From assembly GCA_002269645.1 (NCBI GenBank), contig NIVC01000746.1:62001-126000 (forward strand): DNA of 64,000 nt, read 5' to 3'. Each line of letters starts with the position of its first letter. The first letter of the stretch is position 1. This document shows positions 24,201 to 49,594 of this stretch, one piece after another. Origin of the DNA: Macrostomum lignano. Taxonomy: Eukaryota. The position numbers and the translations under genes were made by a program. The notes beneath the pieces are model-generated. The model searched no databases, had not been told where the DNA came from, and saw only the letters and a program-made list of their open reading frames with translations.

Positions 24201-27136
24201 AGCCTACAAAGGCAAAAAATCCGCCCCCTGGTGGCACCCGGCGCTCGGATCCCTCCGGCGCAAGGCAAAGTGCTTCCAACGGAAAGCTCGCAAGAGCAAG
24301 GACCCAGCTGACCTGGCCGCCTATCAAGAAGCGATCCGCGACTTTAAGCGTGAAACCAGGAAAGCCAAGTCCGACAAATGGCGCCAATACTGCGCGGAGT
24401 TAGAAGGCACCCGCCCTACTTCGCGCGTAGTTAAGGCTCTCACCCTCGACAAAATGTCAAAGCTCTCAGTCATTAAAAGACCGGACGGCCGGCTCGCTGA
24501 GAACCCTGGGGAATCGCTGGACATTATGCTCACCAGCTCTTTCCCACGTGCCGCACCGCAGCTAGGCCCACCGGACCACTCTCCGGGCGGACAGATCCTG
24601 GCTTCGACCATCATTACTAGAGAGAGGACGGCTCGCGCCGCAAAATCCTTCTCTCCTTTCAAGTCCCCGGGTCCTGACAACATTTATCCTGCCTTCCTTC
24701 ACGAGGCAGTTAAAAATGACAGGTTTCTGGGCCTCCTCTGCAACCTCTTCAAGGTCAGCATTACCCTCGGGTATGTGCCAAAAGCCTGGCAAGAGGCTAC
24801 GGTTGTCTTCATACCCAAGCCAGGAAAGGGAGACTATCACTCCGCCAAAGCTTACCGCCCTATCAGTCTGACGTCCTTCTTCCTCAAACTGATGGAACGG
24901 CTGGTGCTCTGGCGCCTTCTCCTCGTTGAGCTGAGGAACTCCCCGCTCTCCCCTAATCAGCACGCCTTTCGTCCTGGACGTTCCATCGAAAGTGCGCTGC
25001 ACGCCATTGTCGACAAGGCAGTGGATACGCGCTGTCGCTTTTCCTCGACATTGATGGTGCTTTTAACAATGTGCTCTTTGAAGCCTTTAAGCGAGCCCTG
25101 GAATCTCGGGGCACGCACGAGCACCTCATCCGCTGGATCATGTACATGGTCTCCCATCGTACTGCCACCTCGCACCTCCTGGGACACTCACGCTCCGTGG
25201 AAGTCCAGAAAGGCGGACCGCAAGGTGGAGTCCTCAGCCCGATCCTCTGGAATTTAGTCATGGACGAGCTGCTTTGCAGCCCGCATCCGGACCCTGTTCA
25301 GAAGGTCGGCTATGCGGACGATGTTACCGCCACTGTGGCTGGACCATCGCCCGTGGTCCTCAGGGACATCCTTCAAGCCTTTATCCACCGTGCCGAGCGC
25401 TGGGCACATAGCTGCGGTCTCAGGTTCTCTGAGTCTAAAACCGTGGCTGTCATGTTCACCAGCCGCCGAAACTGGAGGATCGAACCGCTCTCCCTCTACG
25501 GCAAACCTGTTGCCATGGAGAAACAAACTAGATGTCTGGGCGTCACCCTCGACCACAGGTTGAGCTGGACCCCGCACGTCCAAACTAAAGCCCGCAAAGC
25601 TCTCGCGACTCTCGCGCAGATCCGCAGAGCTTTCGGTGCTACCTGGGGCCTCACCCCCCGCCGCCTCTGGTGGATTTACACTGCCATTGTTAGACCGGCC
25701 ATCTCCTTCGCCGGCTTCATTTGGAACAGTGCCCTAGAGGTGAAAGGGGTTCTTGAGGTTTTAAATAGGGTGCAAAGGCCGCGCTTGTCGAGCTATCATG
25801 AGCGCGGCTCCCTCAACGCCCTTCGCTGGCATGAACTCCTTCTTGGACATTCCCCCCCCTCGACCTCTTTGTTAGAGGGGAGGCTATGAAAACCACCCGT
25901 CGTCTGCTTGACGCGAGTGTCCAAATCGAGAAGCAGTTTGCCTTCAGAAAGCGGAACCTCCGGCCGCATGGCGACCTCAGCCTGCGAGACCTGGAAGCAG
26001 CGAGAGGCCTGCTGACCCTCTCGGACGGAATCCCGTCCACGCTCTGCCCCCCGCTCAAATTCAAAACAGCATTCCACCACGCCATGAAGCGAGAGACAAC
26101 TGGAAACCCCATGAAATCCACTGCTTCACTGACGGGTCCCAAATCAACTCCGCCTCTGGATACGGCTACTGCATCGTGTCTGGAGGGAGAACTGCGGCGA
26201 CCTTCTCCCAACACACCGGCACCTGCTCCACCGTCTTCCAGAACGAAGTTTTCGCCATCAGCTCCTGCGCCATGGAGCTGTACAATCAGCGCGTCTGGGG
26301 GAAGGAAATTACCCTCCACTCGGACAGTCAAGCGGCGATTCACGCCCTTGAGCGCACCACCACCTGCTCGCGTACAGTCCTCGACTGAATCGGGCAGCTC
26401 AACCGCTTAGGCGCCTCCAACAAGGTGTCCCTAAGGTGGATCCCCGGGCATTCGGGCCACCCCGGCAACGAGCTGGCCGATCGCCTGGCCAAGGCTGGCT
26501 CGACCGGTTCTTTTACTGGTCGCCTGCCCGTGGCCCCCACCCCCATCGCCGTTGTCACCACTCGGATCAACCAGTGGGTAACTTCTAAGCACAGGGAGAG
26601 GTGGGCTAACGCCCCCGACTGCCGGCAATCCCGCGCGGCTGTCCCCTGTCCCTCCCCCGCCCTACGCAGGGCCCTGCTTGGACTCAACCGCAGGGACATC
26701 AGGGCGGTTACCATGGCCCTCTCGGGTCATGGCTGCTTTGCCAGGCATCGTTACCTCCAGGAGAAAATCCGCAGTGAGGAATGCCCTTTCTGCCTCTCCG
26801 GTGTCGAGAATGCGGAGCACTTCATCTGTGAATGCCCCGCCTTTACTCAGGACAGGCTCACCTACCTCGGCCCAAACCCGGACCTCTCCGACGTTTTCAG
26901 GCCCGAGAATCTCTGCCAGCTCGTCCGCTACCTAAGGGCTACCGGGCGAGCGACAATCCACCTCCTGGACTCTCCGGAGGGGGACCGCGCTGCGGACGCC
27001 GGCGCCACCGGAACTCCCTGCGCGACACCGCAGCACTAGCTGCCCGTGGTCGCCAGGGGTTAGCGAAATGGGCGGCAACGCCTCCTCGCTGTTTCCGGAC
27101 GCACGGAGCCCCCTGCAGCTAAGTCAAGTAAGTCAA
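21255..27136 (+). mobile_element. Full-length non-LTR retrotransposon, LOA/R1-group (ORF1; ORF2 with APE, RT, RNase H, CCHC), multiple frameshifts
   Basis: 13-bp TSD GGGACATCCGTGC at 21242-21254 and 27137-27149; 3' tail TAAGTCAAGTAAGTCAA. ORF1 starts at ATG 21856. APE: ILQLNLHHC…LLQEPW, GDIN, SDHR. RT: KSPGPDNIY, PQGGVLSP, YADD at 25311. RNase H: TVFQNEV…SDSQAA…[15 protein letters not shown]. Zinc finger: CPFC…HFICEC. In-frame TGA at 26386. Confidence 0.95.
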
Positions 27137-27390: not shown

Positions 27391-27889
27391 ATGGTAGAAA
27401 TTGTACCAGTGCTAGGCAAGGACTACTCAAATAGAAGCAGGGGCTGGTTTACGCCAAAAAAAGCACTACGGAGATAGAAAGTTTTAATTTTTTCAGCACA
27501 AAAATTTTTATTGCTTTTGATAGGAGGCAGACCCAATGTTAATAGCTTGATTTTTGTGCCTTTCTTATAGCTCTATTGATATTTATACAAGCTGTTGAAA
27601 CGCGCGGATTTTGAACCCGGGGAATTCTAATCCCCGGAACTACTTTTGCATGTATTCTGAAATCTAAGGCCATACACAAACAAATTAATAGTAGGATAGA
27701 GGTAGACATAAAATGGAGCACATTCGTGTAAAATTAGGGTTTGAGGCTAACGTTGATAATTAATATTGTTTGCTGGGGTACTCCACAGTCCACAGAATGC
27801 CAGGCAATGTCTGTCTGACTCTAAAACATGTATTGGCAAACTCTGGCCTCTCCCTGACTCTCCCTATGTCCCTTGGATCCTTTAAAATT

Positions 27890-28418
27890 TCTATCGTCTC
27901 TTTCCTTTCTTCTTTCTCATCCCTCGTCTCTCCTCTCTCCTCTCTCTTCTCTCCTCTCTCCTCTCTTCTCTTGTATCTTCCCTCATCTCTCTTCTGTTTC
28001 ATCTCTCTTCCCTATTCTTTTCTCTCTCATCTCCTCTCTCCTTTCTACTTTTCGTTTTTCTCTGCTCTCCTTTCTCCTCTCTACTCTTTCGTTTTCTCCC
28101 TCCTCTCCTCTCTCCTCTCTCCCCCTCTTCTCTCGTCTCTTCCTTCTCCTCTCTATTCTTTTCTCTCTTCTCCTAACTCTCTCCTCTACTCTCTCATCTC
28201 TCCTCTCTACTCTTTCCTCTCTCCCCTCTTCTCTCGTCTCTTCCCTCACCTCTTTCCTATCTTTCTTTCCTCTCATCTCTTTTCTTGTTTTATATCTTCT
28301 CTCTCCCCTCGTCGCTCGTCTCTTCCCTCACCTCTCTTCTCTCTCGTCTGCTCTTTCATCTCTCCTTTCTCTTCTTTTATCTTTTCTCTCTTATCTCTTC
28401 TCGTTTCTATCTGCTCTG

Positions 28419-28506
<88 letters not shown>

Positions 28507-29310
28507 CTCTCTTCTCCTCTCTACTCTCTCCCCTCTTCATTCTCCTATTTCCTCTTCTCTCTCCCTGTCTCTCTTCTCTCCTCTAGTCTCTGTAATATCT
28601 TCTCTCTTATCTCTCCTCTGTTCTCTGTACTCTCCCATCTCTCATCTGTTCATCTGCTCTCTCATCTGTCATCTTTACTCTCTTATACGTTCTCTCACTT
28701 ATCTCCTCTGTATTCTTCTCTTTCACCTCTTCTGACTCCTCTCTTTCCTTACTCCTCTCTTCTTTTCTCTTCCCCCTTCTATACCCTCTCTCTCCTCTAT
28801 TATTATCTCTCGTCTCTCTGCACTCTCCTCTCACCTTTTTCATCTCTCATCTCTTCTTTCATCTGTCTCATCTCTACAATCTCATCTTTTTCCTCTCTCC
28901 TCCTCTTCCCTTTACTCTCTCATCTCTCCTTTCTCCCATCTTCTTACACCCCTCTCTTATCTCTATCTCTTCTTTTCTCACCCCTTCTCTCCCCCTCTTA
29001 TCTCCTCTCTTTTCTATCCTTTCTACTCTCTCCTCTCTAATCTCTCCTCTCCTCTTGACCCTCTGTCATCTTCTTTCTGCTCTCTCATCTCTACTCTCTT
29101 CTCACTCTTCTCTACTCTCCTCTCATCGATCCTCTGTCTCATCTTTCCCCTCTTCTCACCTTTACTCTTTCCTCTCCCTCCTTTCTCCCCTCCTCTCGCT
29201 TCTTCCTCCCTTCTTCTCTGCTCTCTCCTCACCCCACTCGTCTCCTCATCTTATATCTTTTCTCTTATCCCCCTCTCGCCCCTCCTCCCTCTCTAATAGT
29301 CTATTCTTTT
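27890..29310. repeat. 1.4-kb polypyrimidine (CT-rich) low-complexity tract with a pure (CT)n core at about 28422-28503
   Basis: Direct reading; the L/S/F-rich and E/R-rich ORFs are compositional artefacts. Confidence 0.95.
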
Positions 29311-30019
29311 TCCTTTTCACTCTCATCTGGCCCGCAGCCCTGAGCTGGATTCTTTATCTGGCCTTTGAGATAAAAATCTGCCGATCCCTGCTTCGAAATA
29401 TCATGGGACATAGTACTATCATGGTTGTTATCATTTCTCATGCTTTAATCACGTCATCTTTCTGGCCAATTAGCAGCCCTGAGAGGAATCTGTGTATCTC
29501 CATTCTCCAGCTCCACCACCACAGTCTGCAGCAGTCTAACAACCAAAGAAATACGCATTTCTTAGGAGACCATTTAAATTTTAAAGTACCTTATGCGAAT
29601 CTTAATGTTAAAATTTTCATGGTGTAACTAATTTAGTAGGATAGTAGGATTGCATTGTAATCAGTTATTCATTAATTTTTCGCTATTTTTACAAACCATC
29701 CCACATAGCCTTGATTTGCCATCCTTGTTTAACTGCTGCGACTTGTCTATACAGAGGACAGTAGATTGAATCCCTCGCTAAACTCTCTCCTCTCCACGCC
29801 TCTCCACTCGCGGGGGTACAGAGAAGGCTATTAAAAAGTTATTCCAAAACACTGTACATTCGCTATGTACATTGAGCCCTATCGCCTGATCCTTCGTCTG
29901 GGGGAATGAGTTGGATGAGCGGCAAACAACAGAAAATGCAGACAGACTTCACATGCCTACAGTTTCTGTTCTGATTGAGATACAGAGTTGAGACTTTACA
30001 ATTAGACAGAGAATAAGTC

Positions 30020-30560
30020 AATAAAGAATTGTGTCAAATTTGAAGTTAATCGCTTTACGTGGAGCAAACTTATAGCAGCCGAAAGTTAGTCAATTTAAAA
30101 CCTATTTACACCCTTTGTCCAGATCGGGAAAGAGAGGCAGGCGGGCGGAGGTTGGGGTGGCTGCCTCGCTGAAAAAAACAGCCTAACTTTAAAAGTGCAC
30201 AACGCCGTTCAGAATTAACTTTAAAACTCGAAATTTTACACGATTGTGTCAAAATAGTTGAAGATTGGGTGTGTCAAATTTGAAGAGAATCGGTTGAAGT
30301 GGCGCGGCGCTATGGGGGATTTAGTAAAAAAAATCGCGCATTTTGAGCAGTTTTTTGTACTTTTAGGTGGGAAGACTTGAGTCTAGGAAATTTAAATGTA
30401 GCCTAAGACATTCTCCGTAGTAAGTTTAGGGTGGGTGTAAAGTTTGGTGTCATTTGGTTGAGCGGTTTGGGAGTCCATAGCGATCAAAATTGTCCACAGA
30501 CAGACAGACAGACACACAGACAGACAGACAGAGTTTTGGTTTTTATAGGTATAGAAAAGC
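30020..30560 (+). mobile_element. Possible non-autonomous Helitron/Helentron-type element
   Basis: Repeated GTGTCAAATTTGAAG..AATCG motifs followed by a (CAGA)n microsatellite and TTTTATAGGTATAG, an arrangement resembling DINE-1/Lep1-like elements. Family resemblance only. Confidence 0.35.
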
Positions 30561-31088
30561 TTTTCGTTCAAAAATACGAATTCTATTCTATTATATGTCA
30601 TATGCCTAAAACCATTAAAATAGCATTGCTCGACTCATTGATTTTATGAATCTACGAATATTTATCCTTCTTAGCTGACTGTGTAACAATATGTGTAACA
30701 GAGATGAGAAATGGATTCATACAACCAAAGAGTCGAGCAGTGCAATGCACTTTTATAATTTTTAGGGACAGGAAATGTACGTAGAATAAAATATTGACAT
30801 AGTATCGATCATTTTTGCTAGGGTCAACGTGGAATCGGACTTCGTTAAATAAATCCGTTTTATTTGTAAACTTTTAGGGGAATGACTCTGGGTATCGTGC
30901 TCTTCTACTAGTCTGCAGTTTTACAAAAGAAATCAGTTACTTAGGCGTTACTTTTGAACTCGTGCACTGCTAAATAAGTATGGAAAGATAGAATAGCAGA
31001 TTAAGAAAAGAGAAGTACGGCTCGTATCTAATTTGAAGACCAAATTAAAAATGATTTTTCATCCATTTCAGTAATCCTTTGGGATCCG

Positions 31089-32330
31089 TCATTGCTTCAA
31101 GCCGGATACGACCGGAACAAGAACGCGCCAATGATGACGGCAGTGGCGGTCACTCCGAATAGCATCAGCAATCTCTCCACAGCTCGGGTCGCCACGGCCC
31201 AGTCCGACTCGGTCGGAGCATCGCAAACTTCTTCCGTCTTGTCTCGATCTGAAGCGTCGGCGGGCGACGGGCCCACCCGGTTCAGGCAGAGCAGGCGGCC
31301 CAGGAATTGGACGAAGACCGCTCGGGCGCAGGCCGACATGCGCGCGGTCGGCGACGCGAAGTGGAACCGCATGGTCAGCGACGTCAGCAGCAGCCGTGAT
31401 GAACAGGGCGATGGCCGGCATGTCCTCCGACTTCGGCAGAATTCCGTCAAGCAGGAGCAGGAACACAGTGTAGCTGAGCATGATGGTGACGCCGAATCCC
31501 AGCTTCTCACCGGAGTCAAGAGGCACAAAGTACAGCAGCAACTGCAGCAGAGTTAGAAGTAGTAGCGGAATGATCACATTAACTATGTAATACGTCGAAA
31601 CGCGCTTTATCTTCAGTGTTAGATGAAAAACGTTTATTGGAAAGATTTTGATCTCAAAAATGTAGTAATATTTTTTTTTAACTTCGGTAGTGGCTTCAGT
31701 CAGAATCCATTCGCTGCTCTCCCTGTATATCGCAGTGATATTGTACCGAATTTCCGGATTAGCGATCACTGGTCGAATAAAGCGTTGGTATTCCAAGTCA
31801 TTCAAGAACAGCAGAAGGCTACAGGAGTGATAATCAAATGGAAAATCAGCCATAACAAATTTGCAATAGAATTCGAACTCCCGACGCCATATGGTAGTCA
31901 CCGAAGTCAAATTTTCGTTGACCGAATTCAGCCCAACGTGGCTAAACGGCACCAGGACTTGCTCGGCACCATTGCCGTTGTATAGCATTATTTCTGGATG
32001 CCAAATGAGGGAAGCGTCCCATCGGGTGTAATTGAGGCCACCAAAGTCAGCCGGCTTCCACACGAGCCGCTCTTCGTCTCTGGTCGTCTCCAAAAACAGC
32101 GACACTGTCATGCTCTGCTGTGCCGTGTCCACCGACACGATGTGGCTGAGCATGGCATTGAACGATACGTCGAGCATCTTGTTGCGACTCGTAGTCCAGT
32201 TGATTCTCGGGAACAGCGCAGGACTGAACCCAGGAATGTTTTTCAGGTATCGCTGGAGATTCGCTTCGAAGTCGGTAGCAGCCGAAGCAGCTGTCAGAAG
32301 ACAGAGCAGCACTGAGGCAACAGTCAGCAT
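31089..32330 (-). pseudogene. Intronless nAChR-like Cys-loop subunit, copy A, 26-bp frameshift deletion in M3
   Basis: About 98% identical to copy B. The 26 bp at 38466-38491 of copy B are missing between 31394 and 31395, so M3 and M4 are replaced by an out-of-frame tail. The correct M3-M4 sequence continues in frame 31097-31394. Confidence 0.85.
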
Positions 32331-33051
32331 TCTGCTTGCCCACAGGTCCTATTCTGTTTGTGTCTCGTAGTAGCAAAGAACGAAGTAAGTATCTGACTAA
32401 ATATGCTACTGCATCTTGGAGCAAATATTTGCCGAAATTGAATGCATCACCCACTGGTTGCAATTAATGCTGAAAATGTCAAATAAGTCCTGATTTAAAT
32501 ACGGAGCATGTATTAGCATTGGGCTGCATTGATTTCCGTCTCTCTTTCCGTCGCAAGAAATCGCAAGAATAATTTCCTGTTTTTGGTAAATTATCCATTT
32601 TCTGAAACTTGCTTAAAAATATGCCAGTAAGTGGCTACTGCGAAATTAACGATTTCTTATACGCGTAACTCCATACTCCCTGCACGTTTATTGACAAGCT
32701 AAATCTATTGCAGCTTTTGGGGTCTGAGTTTGTCACTTAATCAATATTTTCAATATTTGTTAGGTTGTAAGCGGAAGCTGATACGTAATAAAACGGCTCT
32801 TTTCAGGGCTGTAACTATTTTGTCAGTATGTAGATACAGATAATCTACATGATTGGTTGACAATAATTGCTGTAGACCCAATAAAATTAAATATGTGATT
32901 GAGCAGCAAAAATGCTGTGCAGCGGGTTGTGCAGCGTGCAGTGGACGGTGTGGCGGAAAACAAGGTAATGATTTCAATGATTCACAAGCACTTGGAATGA
33001 CGCTTTTACCATGAAACTATATTCTAGTTATCTATAATTTCGAAATTAATA

Positions 33052-33808
33052 TAGCTTTTTGCAGCTTATTTGGGCTTACGCGCATTAAATTTAATCCAAG
33101 ATAGGTTTGCCAATGTAATGGAGCTTTTGTCTATGGTAGCAAGGCTGGCGCAGCGGCATTTAACTTGGTCCAACAAGCATCAATTTGGTCCAAATGCTTG
33201 TGAGCCAATGGCAAACTCTTGCCTTCTCGCAACCGCCTAAGGGTTGTTGCGCACCGCTGGAATGTCAGCGTCTGTACCAGCAATTTCAGTCGCTTTTCCA
33301 GAGCTCTGCTGATAGTCCAAATCTGATAACCAACTGGAACTGTTCCTTCAACTGCTGCTGCATTTTCTGCAACGTCAAAAAAGTATTTGTCTCAATTGCA
33401 TTAAGTAGCAGTTAGACCTGAGTCTCTAGCAACTTGCCTTGGCGATTGCCACCTTTCACAGGCGACCTATGCCAGAAGTGGTTTCAACACGCTGATGGAT
33501 GCTGTAAATCATCTTTATTCTATATTCAGCAACCTTGCAATGTCCTTTGGGTGTTCACCTCTGTTGAGTGCTTTGATCACAAGCCATCGGCATACGTTCG
33601 ACAACCTAGCATGGTCCACAACTCTGGGGCTGATCCTGCTCCTCCGCAACAGTTGCAAATAAAGCTATGGACCAAATTGATGCTTGTTGGACTAAATTAA
33701 GTGCCGCTGTGGCAGCCTTGCTACCATAGACGAAAGCCCTGTTACATTGGCAAACCTATCTTGGATTAAATTAAATGCGCGTAAGCCCAAATGGGCTGCA
33801 AAAAGCTA
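33052..33808 (-). mobile_element. Internally deleted Tc1/mariner (IS630-like) element with long TIRs
   Basis: About 141-bp inverted repeats (33052-33192 and 33668-33808, roughly 90% identical), TA-flanked. The interior encodes a broken HTH region (RWLVIKALNRGEHPKDIARLLNI…KGGNRQGKL…LTLQKMQQQLKEQFQLVI…TISRAL). No DDE domain. Confidence 0.8.
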
Positions 33809-35739
33809 TATAGAATGAAAGCCGACATGTCTAATAGAGACAGAGTATAACTCAAATTTTATACACAGTTTTCTGTCTTTCTTTGATTTGTGCATTTATT
33901 TCATAGTAATTACAATTCCATAGTCCAGAACCCGAGACCAAAAACTCTGTCACAGTGTCCCAGGAATGGTTGGCGACGCCCCGCAACATCGCGGCCAGTA
34001 GAAGTCGATCACTTTTCTCAGCCCCTCGGAGCTTCACTTCTTTTCGGCGATTCCGAAGCACTTCACACAGTATTATCGCTTGAAATGGTGGTCTCGTGAA
34101 GATGAAAATCCTAAATTCAGCTTTCATCCGAGACTCCGACTACTACCATATGAATCGTACATAGATTGGTATCGAAAAAAATCTTAATTTTTATGCTCAC
34201 ATTAAAACAAATCGGCTCATTGTAATAGATGTCTCTCACCACAGCTTCCCTTTGCAGCACGAGGCGCATAAATTATTGTTCAAATTCTTGTGAACTCGAA
34301 TTAGCTTTCCCGATGACGAAAACTTGCAGGCATCAATCCAAGAAAGTCTGTCCGTGGCGTTTCCATTTTCCATGTAGTGAACCGCATAGAAGATCCTGAC
34401 TCCTGAGGGTCGCCATCGCTACCATCGGTCCAGCTGTAGGTCTGGTCGGAGAGTCAGTCGAGCTCCCTGCCAATCCAAGCGTGCGTGCAGTTGGCCAGCC
34501 GTCCAACCAGAGTGTTCTCGTGCTCCGATCCGATGGACACCAGGTGACCTCGTTAAGAGCGGTAGGTCTGCTCAGCCTGAAACCAGTACTGCGGACTGCT
34601 GAACCACTTGTAGCAGGAGGCACCTCGGGGCAGCCAGTGAGACTGCGGGCACTGAAACTGAGCCTGAGACCAGCAGGGCTGTGCTCAATGTCAAAACCAG
34701 TAATGGGACCTTAAGTCACAATTTTTCTTAGTCTGGCGACCTCTCTATATATTAGAAGCAATAAACTATTGAACCAATGCAAAAATGATCAGATGCAACC
34801 GAAAATTCTTTATTTTTCACTTCGCAACTGGCTTGAAAGCGTCTTACCTTGATAACGTTTTAGCATTTTACGAGTATGTCACAGCGTTCTGTCAGACAAG
34901 AGACATACTGAAGACCAGCGGCTTGGGACTCCGGCTTTGCCAGATAATATTTTTCACGCGAATGCTTCTTTTTTTGCGATACTCGCACTGTGCCCCTTGC
35001 TGTTCGCTTTCACACCTATGACAGCTCGCAAAGATGCTCTCGATTTTGTAATTCAGTGTAAGTAAAGCTTATTCGTCTTTTACGCTCGTATTTTTGTTCT
35101 TTTTGTGCCGATTTCCGCACACTAAATTGTACTTCGAGAAACAAAATTGAAAGGACGTAGAAGGAACGTAGGACGCAGGTGTTAAGAAGGTTTATTGAGA
35201 TTCACTGGTTGGGGTGACCATGCAGTCTTTTGTTCTAATTGTCCTTTGCCATGCAGAAAGAAGCCTTGTGACTTTATGAGTCAAAATGCATTGAAAAGCA
35301 GATGGAGAAGCAGGGTATCAGCTGCCACAGATTTTTACCAGCTCAGCGAAGTACAGCTGATTTTCGATGATAATGTTATTATCCGAATGGCTTAGACAAA
35401 ATAATCGATATTGCAAGGCCAGTGAAGACTCCCATTCGATCTGATTTGTTCGAGTAATTTTCTAATTTAATGCAAAGTGTCTGAAATGTCATATGTGAAG
35501 TTATGAGCCGAGTACGCAAACGAGACGAGTATTTGCAAATTGGAAGTAGAAATACACACGCGAACTCTTAAGCGCGGTGTCGCAGTATTTATTAAATTGA
35601 ACTCACTGAGTCAGCATAAACTACTAGATTGAGATTAGGGGCGGTTGCCGCACTGGCCAACAGAGAGAGAAAGTGAATTAGATAACTCCAGCCCCCAAGC
35701 CCCAAAAATAACAAATAACAAATAACAAATAACAAATAA

Positions 35740-37585
35740 TAATATGAGTGAACTTTTAAGTGGCCAATGCCATACAGCGGCCGGTGGTTGGTTGGCCTCC
35801 GGCAGCGAGCTCGTCAGCAGCTGGTCCATGTGCCACCGATGGAGAGCGCTGCCGACCTCAACGTCGCAGTTGCGGGATCCAGCGGACACGACGCTGCCCT
35901 CCGCCCAGCGGGTGCCGTCGCCAGCCTTAGCGTTGGAGCTGAAGTCGCACAGTAGAAGTCGGTCGCCGATTTGAAACTCGCGCGCATGCGGCTGCTGCTC
36001 GACCTGCCGCTCTTGGCGCTGCTGCATGCTGTTCGTCAGCGATGGGATCAGCAGGTCCAGCCGAATGCGCAGTCTGCGGCCGATGAACAGCTGGCTGGGA
36101 GCTTCGCCGGTTGGGAGCAGTCGTAACCGGCCAAACGGATCGCCCAGTGCTGCATGCGAGCAACCGCGTGCTCTGGAATCGCCTTGTTTTCGCCGAGGAG
36201 CCCTAGGAGCGGCTTATGGTCGGTCACAAGGACGAACTTGCAGCCTTGGAGGATCTGGTTGAAGCGCTGGAGGCCGAACATGATCGCTAACGCCTCTTTG
36301 TCCAACTGCGAGTAGCCCTTTTGAGCCTTCGTCAGACTGAGGCTGGCGAAGGCAATGGCTCGGTCTTGGCCGTCCACTCGGTGCGTCAGCACCACGCCGA
36401 GACCATAGGGGCTGGCGTCGCACTCGAGCCGCAACGGCAGCTTGGCGTCGTAATGCATCAGCACCGGAGACTCGAGCAGAAGACACTTGGACTTCTCGAA
36501 GGCTATCTGCTGAGACTCCCCCCACGTCCAGTGCTTCTTAGTCAGCAGCTGATTCACGGGAGCGACCACCGTTGACAGATGAGGCAGGAATTTGCCGTAG
36601 TGCGTCAACATGCCCAAGTAAGCTCGGAGCTGACTGCAGTCTGCGGGTGACGGGGCGTCCTGCACCGCCGTCACCTTCTCCGTCAGCGGCCGCAGTCAGT
36701 TGCTGTCGATCCGGTGGCCCAAATACTTGACCGAATCGCGGAACAACTCGCCCTTGTCCTTGTTCAGCCTCCTGTATGCCTGTCACCAAGATGTCTTCCA
36801 CAAAGACTCGCACAGACTCCAGGTCACCGAGCAGCGAGTCTAGAGTGCGCTGGAATACCGCACTGGCGCAGTTGATGCCGAACGGCATGCGGGTTCAGCT
36901 GGTACAGGACTCGCTGTGTGTTGATGGTCAAGAAGGGCTTGCTGTCTTCAGACAACGGCAGCTGCAGGAAGGCGTTTGACATGTCCAGCTTGGACCATTT
37001 GCAACCGCCACCCAGCTTTGCAAACAAGTCCTCAATGCGCGGCAGTGGGTACAGCTCCGGCCTGGACTCTGCGTTGTAGGTGAGCTTGTAGTCGCCGCAA
37101 ATCCTCACCGAACCGTCCTTTTTGACAACTGACACAATCGGTGCAGCCTAGTCGGAATGTTTGACTGGCGTAATGATGCCGTCAGTCTCCATCCGTCGAA
37201 GTTCCTCGTCGACGCGCTCCCGGAGTGCATAGGGGACCGGCCTGGCCTTGAAAAAGCGCGGCTTCGCCTCGGTAGGCATGCGCAGTTTCACCTCGCCGTG
37301 CCGATAGGTGCCCAGGCCGCCTTGGAAGACCTCGGGGAACTGCGCGAGCAGATCAACTGCTTGTCCGGCCACTGAGTTGACTTGACCAAGGATCGTCGGC
37401 CAGTCCAGTCTCAGCTTTGTCAGCCAGTCGCGACCCAGTAGTGCGACGTCGCCTTGCTCGACCACAAGCAGCGTCAACCGCCGATCTTGGCGGTTGTGCT
37501 GAACTGCGACCTCTGCGTGTCCGATGGGTCGAAAACCCTCGCCCGTGTAGGTTCGCAGCACCGTGGATGTCGGCGACAGACCACG
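35740..37585 (-). mobile_element. Decayed Ty3/Gypsy pol fragment (protease C-terminus, RT, RNase H, integrase tail)
   Basis: LRTYTG…LLGRDW (protease end); ARPVPYALRERVDEEL, VRICGDYK, YPLPRIEDL, LDMSNAFLQL, FVEDILV (RT, mutated YxDD); ECDASPYGLG…YSQLDKEALA…TDHKPL (RNase H); FQIGDRL…RW.EG.V…HMDQL (integrase tail). Stop at 37148, frameshifts, integrase core deleted, no LTR pair identified. Confidence 0.92.
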
Positions 37586-37598
37586 ACAGAAAAAGAAA

Positions 37599-37830
37599 CA
37601 ACTTTCGTCCTTTGTTTCTGTCATTTTTGGAGGTGTGCCGGGACATTCATGAATTTTCACTGGGGCTCTGTCTCTGCTGTGTTTGTGTGTGTTGCGTACA
37701 TTGACCTCCCTGTGCGTGTGTTTAATTCTTATATTTCCACCCTTTTGGTCGCCCACCCCCACCCAAGAGGCTTGTGCCCATACTGCCAAGTCAATTTCTA
37801 TCGCCAGTTCAACAAATTTTTCTCTCTCTC
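37599..37830. repeat. Uninterrupted copy of the dispersed repeat that was the LINE target; truncates the Gypsy element
   Basis: Colinear with 21201-21254 joined to 27150-27390; the target core reads GGGACATTCATGAATTTTCACTGG here. Confidence 0.8.
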
Positions 37831-38167
37831 TCGTCAGTTGATTCAAATTAATTGAAATTATAGAAAAGAATCTAATGAAATTATCTATGCTGTAAATTAT
37901 TAGGGTGATACAAGGGGTCAATTTTGAAAAGGATCAGTTTCATTTTAAAACTTTTAGAAGAATTTAGAAGAAGAAGTAGTTTTCTCTTTTACTAGTCTGG
38001 CGTTTTACAAAAGACGTTTTACATTAGTTCATTATGCATTCCATTAGAACTGGTGCACTGCTAACTAATAGGAGCGTGATAGAAGAAAAGATAAACAAAA
38101 AAAGTAGCAAATTTAAGGAAAAATTTTAAAGATGTTTCATCCATTTCAGCAATCCTTTGGATCCGCC

Positions 38168-39427
38168 TCAAGCCGGATACGAACGGAACAAGAACGCGCC
38201 AATGATGACGGCAGTGGCGGTCACTCCGAATAGCATCAGCAATCTCTCCACAGCTCGGGTCGCCACGGCCCAGTCCGACTCGGTCGGAGTCCCGCCGACT
38301 TCTTCCGGCTTGTCTCGATCTGAACCGTCGGCGGGCGACGGGCCCACCCGGTTCAGGCAGAGCAGGCGGCCCAGGAATTGGACGAAGACCGCTCGGGCGC
38401 AGGCCGACATGCGCGCGGTCGGCGACGCGAAGTGGAACCGCATGGTCAGCGACGTCAGCAGCAGCGACGCGGTGGACAACACCATGGCGGCCGTGATGAA
38501 CAGGGCGATGGCCGGCATGTCCTCCGACTTCGGCAGAATTCCGTCAAGCAGGAGCAGAAACACAGTGTAGCTGAGCATGATGGTGACGCCGAATCCCAGC
38601 TTCTCACCGGAGTCAAGAGGCACAAAGTACAGCAGCAACTGCAGCAGAGTCAGCAGTAGTAGCGGAATGATCACATTAACTATGTAATACGTCGAAACGC
38701 GCTTTATCTTCAGTGTTAGATGAAAAACGTTTATTGGAAAGATTTTGTTCTCAAAAATGTAGTAATCTTTTTTTTTAACTTCGGTAGTGGCTTCAGTCAG
38801 AATCCATTCGCTGCTCTCCCTGTATATCGCAGTGATATTGTACCGAATTTCCGGATTAGCGATCACTGGTCGAATAAAGCGTTGGTATTCCATGTCATTC
38901 AAGAACAGCAGAAGGTTACAGGAGTGATAATCAAATGGAAAATCAGCCATAACAAATTTGCAATAGAATTCGAACTCCCGTCGCCATTTGGTAGTCACCG
39001 AAGTCAAATTATCGTTGACCGAATTCAGCCCAACGTGGCTAAACGGCACCAGGACTTGCTCGGCACCATTGCCGTTGTATAGCATTATTTCTGGATGCCA
39101 AATGAGGGAAGCGTCCCATCGGGTGTAATTGAGGCCACCAAAGTCAGCCGGCTTCCACACGAGCCGCTCTTCATCTCTGGTCGTCTCCAAAAACAGCGAC
39201 ACTGTCATGCTCTGCTGTGCCGTGTCCACCGACACGATGTGGCTGAGCATGGCATTGAAGGATACGTCGAGCATCTTGTTGCGACTCGTAGTCCAGTTGA
39301 TTCTCGGGAACAGCGCAGGACTGAAGCCAGGAATGTTTTTCAGGTATCGCTGGAGATTCGCTTCGAAGTCGGTAGCAGCCGAAGCCGCTGTCAGAAGACA
39401 GAGCAGCACTGAGGCAACAGTCAGCAT
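38168..39427 (-). CDS. Intronless divergent nAChR-like Cys-loop ion channel subunit, copy B, intact, 419 aa
   Basis: Signal peptide, WHPEIMLYN (loop A), Cys-loop CKFVMADFPFDYHSC (C-x13-C), pre-M1 R, four TM helices, DSGEKLGFGVTIMLSYTVF (GEK, cation-type M2), short M3-M4 loop. No vicinal CC in loop C. Confidence 0.93.
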   Translation of the reverse strand: MLTVASVLLCLLTAASAATDFEANLQRYLKNIPGFSPALFPRINWTTSRNKMLDVSFNAMLSHIVSVDTAQQSMTVSLFLETTRDEERLVWKPADFGGLNYTRWDASLIWHPEIMLYNGNGAEQVLVPFSHVGLNSVNDNLTSVTTKWRREFEFYCKFVMADFPFDYHSCNLLLFLNDMEYQRFIRPVIANPEIRYNITAIYRESSEWILTEATTEVKKKDYYIFENKIFPINVFHLTLKIKRVSTYYIVNVIIPLLLLTLLQLLLYFVPLDSGEKLGFGVTIMLSYTVFLLLLDGILPKSEDMPAIALFITAAMVLSTASLLLTSLTMRFHFASPTARMSACARAVFVQFLGRLLCLNRVGPSPADGSDRDKPEEVGGTPTESDWAVATRAVERLLMLFGVTATAVIIGAFLFRSYPA

Positions 39428-42179
39428 TCTGCTTGCCCACAGGTCCTATTGTGTTTGTGTCGCGCTGATAAAGCTCGGCAGGAGCAAAGCAGTCGTGAGA
39501 TAAATGCCTGACTAAATATGCTACCGCATCTCGGAGCAAATATATGTAGCTCGTATTTGCCAAATCAAATTGAATGCATCATCCGGCATCGGTTGATTTG
39601 GATATTGCAAATATAAGCTGCAATGTAAATTGGCATTGGCATTTGTTTCTCCCTCTCCCTCACTCGCAAAACCACATGATTAGTTGTTTGCTTATGGCAA
39701 CCATGCAGTTCAGGCAACTGGTTTTATGTTTGTCGTTCTGATCTGCGGATTAGAGATTAGGTCCCTACTACCGTTACTAACGAATTGTGTTAATTACTAA
39801 TGGGTAGTTCGCTGCCAACAGACTAATCAATATCCCTTCATATTATAGGGTTGAACAACAAGTCGATTTTTTATTTTAAAACTTTTACCGTCAAGACAGG
39901 CTGTCAACAATGTTATTAATATGCATCAGGAGCGAGCATAAGTTCCTTCCTTTATTTGATTGTGGACTCATTTTAGTCCCCTATTTAATCGGCGAAATTT
40001 CCTTACCTCTTCGATTTTATTAATATATTAGCTGACTCAGACTTGTGAAAGAAAATATCCGAAACAAAACTAAAGGAATACTTTTCGAAAAGCTCAACTG
40101 CTCTTTTCTCTAAGTAATAATCAAACATATTTAATAAATTCATTAACTTTTCATTATTTTTCAATAACTTTTTACTCATTTTTCAAAAGCAAAAACAGCA
40201 TTACAACACCATCCTAAATTAGATATACAGTGCAAAAATCTACCTGTTGGTGACTTGAGCCAAATTAACGACTTTAATAATGTCCACGTGCACGTTTATT
40301 GACACGATGAATTTGATCGAAACTATTTTGGGCGGTTTGAAATTGTTACTCAATCAAACAAAACTATAGAAATACGAAACGATAGAAATTCAATATTTGC
40401 ATTGAAGCGCGCTGTCGCTCTTGCAGATGCAGGCAGTCTACAGGACTGATTGACAATTAGTTACTGTAGACGCCCAAGAAAATATAGTATACTCAGAAAC
40501 ATTGAAAAGTCGCCACTCATGCGCCAGTAAGCAATTTCTCTTGGACCATTCTGCAATAAAGGATACGAGAAAACTGATCGGGTAGCTTTAATCTGTCCAA
40601 CCCTCGCACACCGCTCCCCCCACTTCATTCCTCAACTCAAGCCGGCCGCAGCGTAGCAAGTTGCGTCACTCACAAAGATGAGAGACTTTACTTGCACTCT
40701 CAAAAGTGGCGACCACAGACGAAACAAGGATTTCTACTACTTAAGTACTTAATATATACGTTACTTTATTCATCCTTGAGACGAAAGTTTCTGTGATGGG
40801 AACTTTTCGATGTTGCTGAGTATATGTGATTGGCCAGCAAGAAAGGTGTGCATCGGGCTGAGTGGCGCACAACAAGAACGTTCCAACAAGCAGCCTACTA
40901 CATGTTGTGAGGCGTCAGTTGCCGTCATCACAGCCGTTACTGTGCCTGGGCAATGCTAAGAACATAGACTACATGGAGGCTGCATGCATTATGACCATAT
41001 AATATTGTCCCAAGAAGATAGTATCACCATAAACTAATGTTTAAGGAGATAATAAGATAGGACGACAAAATTAATTTTGGTTCAACGGTATTATTCTTAG
41101 TTGTCCATGCATCCGTGGCATCATTTATTTCAAGTTGTTTTGCTCACACCGGTGTAGTGACTGACATTTCAGTGGATGTACATTTCAGTGGACTGGCTAA
41201 TGCAATAAGCCAGCTACTGGCTAATACAGAATCTGTGGGCTAATGTACATTATTGCTGAACCAATTAGCAAGTTGTTTACGTCTGCCAGCTTGGGCTTCT
41301 AAGCTTATCAAAGTCGTTTCAGCTGCCTTTATTTTTATAAAATAGCTTATGTATTCTTCTTTGCTACTGAACTGAAAGCAGAATGCTGTTTTTAGCATGG
41401 ATTAAGGAATAACATGGAAAAAAATTAACATACACTCGTATAATACTAATTTTCTAGACGAAAAGCTTTATGAATATCAATAGAGCTATAAGAAAGGCAA
41501 AACATATCAAAAGATGAACATTAAGTCTGCCTCTCTTATCGAAAGCAATAACAATTTTAATATGAAAAGTGAAAACTACGAGTATTTCCATAGCGTATTT
41601 TTCGGCGTAAACCAGCCTCTTTAACATTTTCTAAGAAACATGTTTCCCGTCCTTCTACTAGAGTAGTCCTTGGGTAATTGTAACGTTACTCGCGTGTGAC
41701 TAAAATACTAATTAATGCCTAAATTTCTATTTTCAGATTTAAAGAAGCGTTTGTTACTAGCAGCAGTAGTCTGTAAAGAGAGTATTATGTACACCGATTT
41801 CTTGCTTCCTTCTACCAAAAACCCACTGAAGCAGCAATAATGGGGCAGCCAGGTGATCCAGAAGCGAGAGAAAAATTGGGCAATTTCAGATCTCTACAAG
41901 AAAGAATTTGAAGCAAGTCGGTCGGCCCGGCCCCGTTTTCGTGGAGAAATCGATCAGCCCAACAGTGATTGACAAGGCCTCCAATATATGCGCCAAACGA
42001 TGCTGAGCTTGGGCACAGATGGCGGAAACTCGTGCGCCCCCACCCGCCACTCCATTGGTCATGCGATGTTTCAAGGAGCTTGAGCTTATCGATAATTCGA
42101 CTATACTGATTGGTGAGAGTGCTCCCAATAATCCACTCAAGAGGCCTGCCGTGTGGCTGCTCTTGCCCTCGGGGGTTTA

Positions 42180-43450: not shown

Positions 43451-45197
43451 TTACGATATTTGATGATTATTTTGCATTTATGTCACCCCACTCTAGGAGA
43501 GGGTGGTTTCTATACCAAAATTCTAGGCATTAGAAGTCCATGCACAGGTGTTATCTGGCTCGTGTATGCGCGGAGGAACTCGTGCAAGATGCTGGCTCAT
43601 GCAAGCCCTGTGGGAGAGCGGAATTATCAGCAGTCGCTCTGCAGGCAGCTGCGTAAGAATTCAACAGCAAAGACTCACACAACACCCATCACCGTGAGGC
43701 TGATTTAGCTGAAGGCTAAACAATAGCTTCTGCATCAGCATGCTCAGTGTGGAGGGCTCGCATCGCAGCTCCGCTATTCCAATTCAGCCGCGACTTCAAA
43801 GCCAACCGGGAGGCGATGAAGCGGAGGAGGCCTCGCGGCATTGTCAATCATTTGATTGAGGCAGCTATTTTGTTTTCAATCCGACTTCAATGGCAAAACG
43901 GCGCTCGCTTCAGCGATTGAATTTAATGAACCGATTTTTTGAGCAGCTTTGATAGAAATAATTTCTAGTTAATTCAGCCTCACTGCGACTGAGAAGGCGG
44001 CTTGCAGCAGGTGAGATTTCTCACCATCCCCTCTCACCTGGGCTGCAAACTGCCTGCCTGTCTTTATCCTGTGATTAGCGGCCCAGTGAATAATTAATTA
44101 TCAGTAGCAGCGGGGGGCCCCAAGAGACTTCGGGTGGAATTAAATTGAATTTTTAATGACTGTCCGAGCAGCGATCTCACGGGCTGCAAGTGCAGGATTT
44201 GCAGGGCCGATGGAGGCCTTGGCCCAAGGGTTTGTGTTGCGATTTCTTTTTTTCTTCTGCACTCGCCAAGCATTGTTGGCGGGGGGGGGCTTCTTCAATT
44301 TGCTGATATCCCCCCAGCCTTTTCTCCACGCCCCCTCTTTATATCCACCCTGTGGCTCTCGCCTGCCAGCCCGCGGCGACCGGAGTCGCTGTCCAAATTT
44401 TTCGGATTGAATTTTCCCGCCCCTCCGTACAGCGGCTGACTCCAGCAGGGCTCCAGCGATGAGCAGGCGGAGTAGCGGCTGCCGCCACTTCTACGAGTAT
44501 ATGACACCCTTGGGAAATTAGCAAATAACATTTTCGGCCAGGGCTTGTAAGCCTATAAAGCTTAGTTAGTAGCGATCGGATTGAAGGAGTGAGTTGAGAG
44601 TGAGTGGGTGGGTAGGTGAGGTGGCCCCCGGGGCGGCTCCCTCATCAATTCCGATTCGTCGTTAAAGCGAAGATCAGCAGCAGCAGTAGTATCTTTTCTA
44701 GGACAAGTAGCCCAGTCTGGCGGACAGGGTAGGCAAGATTTCCGACTGAAATCCTGGCATGGTTTTGAGTGGCTCAACAGCAGTTCAACAGCAAGACAAC
44801 TTGAGCATCGTATGGAGACAAAATATGATTTATCAGACAACTTCGATTAACAGCCTGGGGAAATGGAAGATCTCATATATTCATAAAAAGGGGATCCAAA
44901 AAGGGCTCAAAGTTGTCTGTGTTGATAAGCTTGCATGCAGACTTCTCAAAGCCAATGAGAGCGGTTTGTGCTCACAGCTACTCAACCAATGACCTGCAGG
45001 GCTGAGAGGCAATCACTCACCGGGTGGGGGGGGGGACTGGATGAGGAGGCAGAGGGAGGGGACGCTTGGTGGTATCTGAGAATTAATAAACACACGCGCG
45101 GATCTGAAGTACCAGCAGGTCGTCAGGTGTCGTGAGGTGTTACGGTTTGCAGTCTCAATTTCACTTAGAGGGAATCTAAACAAACAACAGCAGCGCC

Positions 45198-49419: not shown

Positions 49420-49576
49420 CTATTAGCTAATATAGAGCTACCGTTTGTTACTCTTTAGCTTATCTTATGCCAGCAAAATTCTTTGCAATGATGTATTATC
49501 ACATGATTATTGTTTGATGCGCCAACTTTCGAAACCATGACATTCAAAGATATTCCTTCGTTACTATAGATTATAT

Positions 49577-49594
49577 ATAGATAGACAGATAGAT

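What the first reader, a model, noticed from the sequence alone, without database searches (positions are those of the whole stretch)
31089..39427. Tandem intronless nAChR-derived receptors that have lost the acetylcholine aromatic cage: candidate contact chemoreceptors
Seen: both copies are single-exon and keep the Cys-loop and a cation-type GEK M2. They lack the loop C vicinal cysteines (KKDYYIFENKIF instead), the loop B Trp (LLLFLNDMEY in place of FGSWTY) and the loop D Trp (SLFLETTRDEE), and have a very short M3-M4 loop. Known: cephalopod chemotactile receptors are intronless, tandemly arrayed nAChR derivatives that lost these residues and detect poorly soluble compounds; intronless nAChR expansions also occur in bivalves. 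Inference: an independent or homologous sensory receptor family in this animal. This is the strongest candidate for an undescribed system in the window.
Basis: partly seen in the sequence, partly recalled or inferred. Interest (0 to 1): 0.75.

Follow-up and report, generated by a model that had tools for sequence, protein, structure and literature searches.

The report
Flatworm orphan nicotinic-receptor-like gene pair
Two neighbouring intron-free genes, one intact and one recently broken, encode a very divergent relative of nicotinic acetylcholine receptors that is otherwise known only from the flatworm Macrostomum; it has lost key acetylcholine-binding residues, and nothing yet shows whether it is a taste-by-touch receptor.

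Summary
Copy B (38168-39427, minus strand) is an intact single-exon 419-aa Cys-loop receptor subunit. It has a signal peptide, a C-x13-C Cys-loop, four TM helices and a cation-type SGEK M2. It has no loop C Cys-Cys and no loop B Trp, and loop D has Phe for Trp. The M3-M4 loop is about 50 aa.

Two corrections. Copy A (31097-32330) carries a 26-bp deletion in M3 that shifts the frame, so it is a young pseudogene. The aromatic cage is only partly lost: Tyr A and Tyr C1 remain, and Tyr C2 is Phe.

The only close relatives among about 15 billion proteins are from Macrostomum lignano. There I found three intact intronless paralogues plus a fragment in a tandem array. The clade is monophyletic (200/200 bootstraps), sits on a long branch and has no stable sister. 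It scores best against vertebrate alpha-type nAChRs, not against cephalopod chemotactile receptors. Among paralogues M2 is 97% identical, but loops B and C only 23%.

The genes are therefore a new flatworm-lineage member of the known class of divergent, intronless, tandem nAChR-like orphans. A chemosensory role is possible but untested. The family is small, and an accessory-subunit role fits equally well.

The parts
38168..39427 (-). Copy B: intact single-exon CDS, 419 aa plus stop. An nAChR-like cationic Cys-loop receptor subunit.
   Evidence: ORF; Pfam LBD and TM domains; PDB nAChR alpha E about 1e-38; AF2 pLDDT 90.8
38699..39373 (-). Copy B extracellular domain (aa 19-243). It has four N-glycosylation sequons (N44, N100, N140, N197) and R84 in place of an otherwise invariant Trp.
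38918..38962 (-). Copy B Cys-loop, C156-x13-C170 (CKFVMADFPFDYHSC).
   Evidence: sequence; both Cys columns are conserved in 154-155 of 155 homologues
38870..38911 (-). Copy B loop B region (aa 173-186, LLFLNDMEYQRFIR). There is no Trp; N177 sits at the Trp B column.
   Evidence: 23% mean identity among paralogues
38732..38776 (-). Copy B loop C (aa 218-232, KKKDYYIFENKIFPI). I224-F225 replace the vicinal Cys; Y222 and F230 sit at the Tyr C1 and Tyr C2 positions.
   Evidence: 23% mean identity among paralogues
38528..38617 (-). Copy B M2 pore helix with flanks (aa 271-300): -1' Glu in SGEK, 9' Leu, 20' Asp.
   Evidence: 97% identical among four paralogues
38276..38422 (-). Copy B short M3-M4 intracellular loop (aa 336-384): MX helix 342-355, then a low-confidence linker.
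31097..32330 (-). Copy A: a 98.2%-identical paralogue disabled by a 26-bp deletion in M3 (junction 31394/31395). The native frame covers aa 1-314 (31389-32330). The M3 end, the intracellular loop and M4 can be read only in another frame (31100-31402).
   Evidence: M. lignano paralogues carry the full M3, so B shows the ancestral state.
37984..38167 (-). 3' flank of copy B shared with copy A (A: 30900-31096). Only about 71-73% identical, with indels.
39428..39461 (-). 5' flank of copy B shared with copy A (A: 32331-32364; weaker similarity continues for about 140 nt). About 85% identical, with indels.
35635..37921 (-). Degenerate LTR-retroelement pol remnant (RT-RNase H) between the two copies, starting directly 3' of copy B. 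It is not part of the receptor but accounts for part of the 7.1-kb spacing.

Best explanation
Shown. The pair belongs to a small clade of nAChR-derived Cys-loop receptor subunit genes. The clade is intronless and tandemly arrayed, and is so far seen only in Macrostomum flatworms. Copy B is an intact gene. Copy A was functional until recently and is now frameshifted.

Inferred. The product assembles into a pentameric cation channel. The channel is probably Ca2+-permeable, because it has rings of Glu at -1' and Asp at 20'. Its pore is under strong purifying selection. The principal-face agonist site can no longer hold acetylcholine in the canonical way, because it has no Trp B for the cation-pi contact and no Cys-Cys loop C tip. 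Loops B and C have been free to change between paralogues. The most likely working mode is therefore a channel gated by something other than acetylcholine bound at this subunit's own canonical site. That could be a non-ACh small molecule in the remodelled pocket, or agonist binding on partner subunits. The array evolves by duplication, gene conversion within the CDS, and loss. Neither the ligand nor the tissue is known.
For: Family assignment: Pfam, PDB sequence search, and AF2 plus Foldseek with all top 50 hits being nAChRs.

Lineage restriction: an exhaustive search of 1.84 billion representatives finds only Macrostomum proteins above 36% identity. Monophyly is 200/200, within-family distance is at most 0.78 against at least 1.48 to any other unit, and the best sister has only 23% support.

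Intronless tandem array in M. lignano: three intact ORFs plus a fragment on one strand within 9 kb.

Constraint pattern: M2 97%, M1 and M3 about 70%, loops B and C 23% identity; TMD dN/dS about 0.1-0.2.

Copy A versus copy B: dN/dS 0.35. None of the 11 nonsynonymous changes falls in M1-M4, and 5 of the 6 extracellular ones fall in loops E, B and C. The CDS is 98.2% identical against 71-85% in the flanks, which indicates conversion.

Residue mapping.
Against: There is no expression, ligand or assembly evidence of any kind. Three of the five cage positions are still aromatic in copy B (Y117, Y222, F230), and loop D has Phe. In other Cys-loop receptors the cation-pi residue sits on loop A or loop C rather than loop B (established knowledge: GABA-A, MOD-1, nematode ACCs). 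An amine agonist, even ACh, is therefore not excluded. Both window copies have Arg where 155/155 homologues have a structural Trp (R84), which could mean impaired folding or assembly. The loop E alignment is ambiguous, differing between MAFFT and HMMER.
Confidence: 0.6

Rival explanations
1. One reading: contact or aquatic chemoreceptors, evolved from nAChRs independently of cephalopod CRs. They would be expressed in peripheral sensory cells and gated by environmental, possibly poorly soluble, compounds.
For: Shared features with CRs: intronless, tandem, cationic pore, loss of Trp B and Cys-Cys. The pore is conserved while loops B and C are hypervariable between paralogues. Recent A/B amino-acid differences cluster in the binding loops. 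Birth-and-death plus gene conversion is typical of environment-facing families. CRs are described as intronless nAChR derivatives (PMC11526382).
Against: The family is very small: 1 intact gene here, 3 in M. lignano. There is no expression evidence. Loss of these residues is common in non-sensory nAChR-like clades (PMC13174522). The pocket positions in loops B and E are polar or charged (N177, D178, K147, R149/R150, E151), not uniformly hydrophobic. dS is saturated, so positive selection cannot be shown.
Confidence: 0.2
2. An accessory (structural, non-agonist-binding) subunit that co-assembles with canonical alpha subunits into ACh-gated heteromers. In this role it would tune conductance, Ca2+ permeability or trafficking, as vertebrate beta1, alpha5 and beta3 do.
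For: It lacks the Cys-Cys, as non-alpha subunits do. Agonist loops drift while the pore and the ECD scaffold (WRREFEF, YNG.G, VDT..Q motifs) stay conserved. The invariant 20' Asp ring residue is rare elsewhere, which is consistent with a permeation-tuning role.
Against: The complementary-face Trp D is also lost (F/L/I/Y in the four paralogues), so it would contribute to neither face of an ACh site. The very short intracellular loop lacks the usual long MA helix region used for clustering. The long-branch, lineage-specific tandem array is unusual for an obligate partner of conserved alpha subunits.
Confidence: 0.25
3. A receptor for a different endogenous transmitter or modulator, for example choline, betaine, a biogenic amine or another small polar molecule, used in neuronal or neuromuscular signalling.
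For: Three or four aromatic positions are retained. Family-invariant charged residues lie next to the pocket (R149, R150, E151; D178 in three of four). There is precedent for nAChR-like channels gated by other amines (established knowledge: C. elegans ACR-23 and the LGC families).
Against: Loops B and C are only 23% identical among paralogues. This is not expected if all paralogues bind one conserved endogenous ligand.
Confidence: 0.15
4. A decaying retrogene family with no present function.
For: Copy A is frameshifted. There is a C-terminal fragment in the M. lignano array. R84 replaces an invariant Trp. [quoted passage not shown]
Against: Four full-length ORFs are intact across two loci despite saturated synonymous divergence. 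TMD dN/dS is 0.1-0.2, M2 is 97% identical, and there are no nonsynonymous A/B changes in the TM helices.
Confidence: 0.07

Closest known systems
Neuronal and muscle alpha-type nicotinic acetylcholine receptor subunits (alpha3, alpha4, alpha1, alpha7)
   Same: These are the best sequence and fold matches (E 9e-50 to 1e-44 with the family profile; TM-score 0.73-0.80). They share the Cys-loop, four TM helices, the SGEK -1' Glu, 9' Leu, Tyr A and Tyr C1.
   Different: The window protein has no loop C Cys-Cys and no Trp B. Trp D is Phe, the PP motif before the Cys-loop is replaced by RRE, the intracellular loop is about 50 aa, and the gene is intronless. Identity is only 21-24%.
Cephalopod chemotactile receptors (CRT1, CRB1 and the CR clade)
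   Same: Both are nAChR-derived, intronless, in tandem clusters, cation channels, and have lost canonical ACh-coordinating residues (PMC11526382; PMC13174522; bioRxiv 2025.03.03.641191).
   Different: The lineage differs and the origin appears independent. No CR chain is among the best 60 PDB sequence hits or the top 50 fold hits, while vertebrate nAChRs, Alpo and 5-HT3A are. The family has 1-3 genes against 26. A hydrophobic pocket, sensory expression and positive selection are not shown here.
Intronless, tandemly duplicated nAChR expansions of molluscs and annelids (Jiao et al. 2019, PMC6896357)
   Same: Intron-free genes in head-to-tail arrays, lineage-specific, sequence-diverse, some copies pseudogenised. 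This is the closest description of what kind of thing the pair is.
   Different: That study did not include flatworms. This clade is small rather than massively expanded. No poly(A) or target-site-duplication trace of retroposition is visible.
Alpo4 and other orphan lophotrochozoan nAChR-like receptors (PMC10338036)
   Same: Remote nAChR relatives without the vicinal Cys, isolated on long branches, agonist unknown. Similar score to the family profile (8e-32).
   Different: Alpo4 keeps the full aromatic cage, including Trp B and Trp D. The Macrostomum family does not.
Flatworm acetylcholine-gated chloride channels (schistosome ACCs; from established knowledge)
   Same: Flatworm nAChR-family subunits with non-canonical function.
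   Different: ACCs carry an anion-type Pro-Ala-Arg motif before M2. This protein has the cation-type Gly-Glu-Lys.

Membership tests
Cys-loop pentameric ligand-gated ion channel superfamily, cationic nAChR/5-HT3 branch | Neur_chan_LBD plus Neur_chan_memb domains above the curated cut-offs | tested here: met
   79.4 and 73.4 bits against cut-offs of 26 and 28.1
Cys-loop pentameric ligand-gated ion channel superfamily, cationic nAChR/5-HT3 branch | Cys-loop disulfide pair 13 residues apart, with an FPFD core | tested here: met
   C156-x13-C170, ADFPFD
Cys-loop pentameric ligand-gated ion channel superfamily, cationic nAChR/5-HT3 branch | Beta-sandwich ECD followed by four TM helices | tested here: met
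   AF2 model with pLDDT 90.8; helices 246-266, 276-297, 306-332 and 385-416; the top 50 PDB fold hits are all nAChRs
Cys-loop pentameric ligand-gated ion channel superfamily, cationic nAChR/5-HT3 branch | Cation-selectivity signature (Glu at -1', no Pro-Ala insertion) | tested here: met
   SGEKLGF; Glu in 146 of 155 homologues and in all family members. Actual selectivity was not measured.
Agonist-binding (alpha-type) ACh-gated nAChR subunit | Vicinal Cys-Cys at the loop C tip | tested here: not met
   I224-F225 in B; L/I-I in the M. lignano paralogues
Agonist-binding (alpha-type) ACh-gated nAChR subunit | Loop B Trp (cation-pi partner) | tested here: not met
   N177 in the window protein; I, S and A in the paralogues. 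No Trp anywhere in aa 171-190.
Agonist-binding (alpha-type) ACh-gated nAChR subunit | Loop A Tyr and loop C Tyr pair | tested here: inconclusive
   Y117 and Y222 are kept. Tyr C2 is F230 in the window protein and is non-aromatic or ambiguously aligned in the paralogues.
Complementary-face (non-alpha) ACh-site subunit | Loop D Trp55-equivalent | tested here: not met
   F79 in the window protein; L, I and Y in the paralogues; W in 100 of 155 homologues
Cephalopod chemotactile receptors | Placement inside the cephalopod CR clade | tested here: inconclusive
   No CR sequence could be placed in my tree. Indirect evidence is negative: the clade contains only Macrostomum sequences and has no stable sister, and CR chains rank below vertebrate nAChRs, Alpo and 5-HT3A.
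Cephalopod chemotactile receptors | Intronless genes in tandem clusters | tested here: met
   Window copies A and B; the M. lignano array of three genes plus a fragment
Cephalopod chemotactile receptors | Hydrophobic orthosteric pocket activated by poorly soluble ligands and not by ACh | not testable with these tools
   Needs a pentamer structure or electrophysiology. By alignment, loop C is hydrophobic but the loop B and E positions are polar or charged.
Cephalopod chemotactile receptors | Expression in peripheral sensory epithelium | not testable with these tools
   No expression data are reachable, and there was no literature hit for the M. lignano gene id.
Cephalopod chemotactile receptors | Diversifying selection on pocket residues | tested here: inconclusive
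   Loops B and C are the least conserved ECD segments (23%), and 5 of 6 extracellular A/B replacements lie in loops E, B and C. However, ECD dS is saturated and A/B dN/dS is 0.34.
Lophotrochozoan intronless tandem nAChR expansions (Jiao et al. 2019) | Single-exon CDS, tandem arrangement, lineage-specific clade | tested here: met
Lophotrochozoan intronless tandem nAChR expansions (Jiao et al. 2019) | Origin by retroposition (poly(A) tail, target-site duplications) | tested here: not met
   No poly(A) tract or flanking direct repeat at the ends of the shared segment. An ancient event followed by DNA-level duplication is not excluded.
Flatworm ACh-gated chloride channels (ACCs) | Anion-type PAR motif at the cytoplasmic end of M2 | tested here: not met
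   GEK is present

The most novel reading that the evidence does not exclude
Macrostomum flatworms turned a retro-copied nicotinic receptor into a small family of ionotropic chemoreceptors for environmental, food or mate cues. This would have happened independently of cephalopods and would be a second, convergent origin of CR-like sensing outside Mollusca.
Probability: 0.18. Interest if true: 0.75.

Novelty: new member of a known kind. Interest (0 to 1): 0.4.

Why it matters
If the family proves to be ligand-gated by something other than acetylcholine, it would be another independent case of a neurotransmitter receptor being re-purposed. It would also occur in a flatworm that is experimentally tractable (Macrostomum supports RNAi, transgenesis and transparent whole-animal imaging). 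With only one to three genes, de-orphanising it is a realistic project, unlike the hundred-gene molluscan expansions. If it proves to be an accessory subunit, it still extends to Platyhelminthes the pattern of intronless, tandem nAChR-like genes with remodelled binding sites that was described for molluscs and annelids. The locus is also a compact example of concerted evolution: the coding sequence is homogenised while the flanks diverge, and one copy was then lost very recently.

Tried and rejected
(1) The word-indexed protein search was nearly useless here. The full-length query returned only itself, one M. lignano protein and one fish 5-HT3A-like protein. The family profile returned two proteins. 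An ECD-only query returned nothing, not even the query itself. The exhaustive representative search was used instead.

(2) Exact-product look-ups for copy B and for P0002 found no contig. P0153 did work.

(3) Three CR primary papers and reviews (PMC10228259, PMC7605239, PMC11055638) are not held. CR features were therefore taken from a review and preprints.

(4) I could not obtain CR sequences for a joint tree. The comparison with CRs rests on PDB ranking only.

(5) The first bootstrap run was invalid because uncapped distances produced NaNs. It was repeated correctly.

(7) Retroposition hallmarks were looked for and not found.

(8) A third receptor copy or fragment in the window was looked for by tblastn at E=10 and not found.

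(9) Pairwise dN/dS for the ECD among paralogues failed because synonymous sites are saturated.

(10) The anion-channel (ACC) reading was rejected on the GEK motif.


Full report
WHAT IS THERE

The finding's interval holds two ORFs on the minus strand. They are 7.08 kb apart and arranged head to tail. Copy B (38168-39427) encodes 419 aa. Copy A's longest ORF is 31089-32330. Both match the Pfam ligand-binding and transmembrane domains of neurotransmitter-gated channels well above the curated cut-offs. Copy B matches solved nAChR alpha subunits at E about 1e-38. tblastn of copy B against the whole window finds only these two loci.

Copy B is a single uninterrupted reading frame containing:
- a signal peptide;
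- an extracellular domain with four N-glycosylation sequons;
- a canonical C156-x13-C170 Cys-loop;
- M1 to M3;
- a roughly 50-residue intracellular loop;
- M4 and a stop codon.

AlphaFold2, run with an 80-sequence alignment, gives a confident complete subunit (pLDDT 90.8, pTM 0.83). Its 50 best Foldseek matches in the PDB are all nicotinic receptors. The gene is therefore real, intronless and of the nAChR type.

COPY A IS BROKEN

A DNA alignment of the two copies, analysed codon by codon, shows a 26-bp deletion in copy A inside M3. It corresponds to codons 313-321 of B, and the junction lies at window 31394/31395. The real C-terminus (M3 end, intracellular loop, M4) can be read only in another frame, ending at 31097-31099. 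All three Macrostomum lignano paralogues have the full M3, so this is a deletion in A, not an insertion in B.

Otherwise the coding sequences differ at 22 of 1234 sites (98.2% identity). dN is 0.0125 and dS is 0.036, so dN/dS is 0.35. None of the 11 amino-acid differences lies in M1-M4. Six lie in the extracellular domain: D139E, K147I, N171S, M179L, D221Y and N227I. Five of those six fall in loops E, B and C. The other five amino-acid differences cluster in the intracellular loop. Most of the divergence therefore accumulated while both copies were under selection, and the disabling deletion is recent.

The shared DNA is short (30900-32364 against 37984-39461). The flanks are far more diverged than the CDS: 71-73% identity on the 3' side and 85% on the 5' side, both with indels. 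Synonymous divergence about ten times lower than flank divergence is best explained by gene conversion confined to the coding region. GC3 rises to 0.83 in the 3' third of the gene against 0.575 in the extracellular-domain region, which would fit GC-biased conversion. That last point is an inference.

THE BINDING-SITE CLAIM

I mapped the canonical positions with three independent alignments: phmmer to alpha1, a MAFFT alignment of 159 subunit units, and the family profile against alpha3.

Robust results:
- The loop C Cys-Cys is replaced by I224-F225.
- The Trp B column holds N177, and there is no Trp anywhere in loop B.
- The Trp D column holds F79.

On the other hand:
- Tyr A is kept (Y117).
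- Tyr C1 is kept (Y222).
- Tyr C2 is Phe (F230).

The statement that the receptor "lost the aromatic cage" is therefore half right. The two most diagnostic features are gone, but three or four cage positions are still aromatic.

The losses are also not rare. Among the 155 nearest homologous units, only about 70-79% have Trp B and about 40% have the first loop C Cys.

The pore is typical of cation channels: SGEK with Glu at -1', and 9' Leu. It also has a family-invariant Asp at 20', which is uncommon among the homologues. By analogy with alpha7's 20' Glu (established knowledge), this suggests appreciable Ca2+ permeability.

Two further oddities:
- The canonical W.PP..F stretch before the Cys-loop is replaced by a family-invariant WRREFEF.
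- Both window copies have Arg84 where all 155 homologues and all three M. lignano paralogues have a structural Trp.

RELATIVES

An exhaustive HMMER search of 1.84 billion cluster representatives gave 7892 hits. Only three representatives besides the query were close: P0006, P0007 and, from the earlier search, P0002. Everything else is at most 36% identical. The close hits are all from Macrostomum lignano, by name or by adjacent UniParc accessions.

I fetched the M. lignano contig around P0153 (NIVC01000059.1). It carries three intact single-exon paralogues on one strand, at L001 7884-9188, 10001-11305 and 12825-14105. It also carries a C-terminal fragment at 16390-16671. Only one of these was annotated. 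The paralogues are 47-53% identical to copy B. The source animal is therefore M. lignano or a close relative.

In a neighbour-joining analysis of 159 units, the four full-length family members are monophyletic in 200 of 200 bootstraps. Within-family distances are at most 0.78, against at least 1.48 to any outsider. No sister group exceeds 23% support. The nearest outsiders are a taxonomic mix: brachiopod, centipede, mite, whipworm, coral, sloth alpha3 and frog 5-HT3A-like.

The family profile scores solved alpha3, alpha4, alpha1 and alpha7 chains at 9e-50 to 1e-44. Non-alpha muscle and neuronal subunits score 1e-40 to 1e-32. Alvinella Alpo scores 8e-32 and 5-HT3A 1e-31. No chemotactile-receptor chain is among the best 60. 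So the family is an orphan long branch inside the nAChR group, with no detectable special affinity to cephalopod CRs.

CONSTRAINT PATTERN

Mean pairwise identity among the four paralogues, by segment:

| Segment | Identity |
|---|---|
| M2 | 0.97 |
| M1, M3 | about 0.70 |
| Cys-loop | 0.58 |
| M4 | 0.54 |
| Loop D, A and E regions | about 0.5 |
| Loop F region | 0.38 |
| Loop B | 0.23 |
| Loop C | 0.23 |

TMD dN/dS is 0.1-0.2. ECD synonymous sites are saturated. The pore is strongly conserved and the two principal-face agonist loops are the freest parts of the extracellular domain.

HOW IT MOST LIKELY WORKS

Shown: an nAChR-derived, intronless, tandemly arrayed subunit family with a cation-type pore. 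The family is under purifying selection and turns over by duplication, conversion and loss.

Inferred: the subunit cannot bind ACh in the canonical way at its own principal face. Its complementary face also lacks Trp D. I therefore favour a channel gated by something other than ACh at this subunit's canonical site (confidence about 0.6 for the package).

Within that, three readings remain open:
- An accessory subunit of ACh-gated heteromers (about 0.25).
- A receptor for another endogenous small molecule (about 0.15). This reading is weakened because loops B and C differ so much between paralogues.

Pure decay is unlikely (about 0.07), given the intact ORFs and the TMD constraint.

The conserved-pore, variable-loop pattern does not separate diversification from relaxation of an unused site. 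The small family size argues against a broad chemosensory repertoire.

COMPARISON WITH WHAT IS KNOWN

The closest description is the intronless, tandem, sequence-diverse nAChR expansion reported for molluscs and annelids (PMC6896357). That study did not sample flatworms.

Cephalopod CRs share the gene architecture and the loss of ACh residues. However, they form a predominantly cephalopod clade with a very hydrophobic pocket and documented sensory expression, and none of this could be tested here.

Alpo4 is another orphan without the Cys-Cys, but it keeps Trp B and Trp D.

Schistosome ACCs are excluded by the GEK motif.

I found no paper on a Macrostomum nAChR-like family.

VERDICT

One copy is a pseudogene and the cage is only partly lost.

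The pair is a new member of a known kind. Interest is moderate (0.4). It would rise to about 0.75 if expression and electrophysiology showed a convergent chemoreceptor.

Noticed in passing
window 38466-38491 (B) / junction 31394-31395 (A): The 26-bp M3 deletion that disables copy A. Its ends share only about 2 bp (GC). It is too long to be a typical assembly indel error but has not been verified with reads.
   Followed up: partly
window 30900-32364 vs 37984-39461: The CDS of the two copies is 98.2% identical, but the shared flanks are only 71-85% identical, with indels. Synonymous divergence is about ten times lower than flank divergence, which suggests gene conversion limited to the coding region.
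   Followed up: partly
window 39176-39178 (B codon 84) and the same codon in A: Arg replaces a Trp of the beta2 WxD motif. That Trp is present in 155/155 homologous units and in all three M. lignano paralogues. The effect on folding or assembly is unknown.
   Followed up: partly
window 38168-38527: GC3 jumps from 0.575 in the extracellular-domain part of copy B to 0.83 from M3 to the stop codon. M. lignano paralogue c3 shows a weaker version of the same trend.
   Followed up: no
L001 7884-9188, 12825-14105, 16390-16671: In the public M. lignano contig, two intact paralogues and one C-terminal fragment of this family lie unannotated next to the single called gene.
   Followed up: yes
window 29292-29803 and 30379-30462: Non-coding blocks 72-82% identical to the left (L001 1946-3157) and right (L001 17526-17609) flanks of the M. 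lignano array. They have the same orientation as each other, although the receptor genes are inverted relative to them. This is either rearranged synteny or shared repeats.
   Followed up: partly
window 35635-37921 (-): A degenerate LTR-retroelement pol remnant (RT-RNase H domains, split over several frames) lies between the receptor copies, immediately 3' of copy B.
   Followed up: partly
window 21856-27039 (+): A non-LTR (LINE-like) retroelement with endonuclease, reverse-transcriptase and RNase H pieces, broken over several reading frames. It lies in a GC-rich (54-61%) block.
   Followed up: partly
window 45198-47852 (+): A single 884-aa ORF with a signal peptide, six cadherin repeats and one TM helix. 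It ends just after the membrane span, like a protocadherin variable exon. A long antisense ORF (45165-47033) is probably a GC-composition artefact.
   Followed up: partly
window 1600-2730, 4920-5470, 6232-6558, 13293-13950, 49566-49947, 51096-51619, 52234-54191, 54851-55396, 56028-57375, 59031-59745, 61320-61839, 62924-63485: A dozen long minisatellite arrays with units of roughly 12-60 bp, which produce many spurious repetitive ORFs. The window is unusually rich in them.
   Followed up: no
window 27770-29400: A CT-rich low-complexity tract with extreme strand asymmetry (GC skew -0.63, AT skew -0.50) just upstream of the receptor locus. A similar tract occurs at L001 1490-2051.
   Followed up: no
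window 38157-38570 (+), 31092-31556 (+): Long antisense ORFs overlap the GC-rich 3' part of both receptor copies. They have no family match and are most likely composition artefacts.
   Followed up: no
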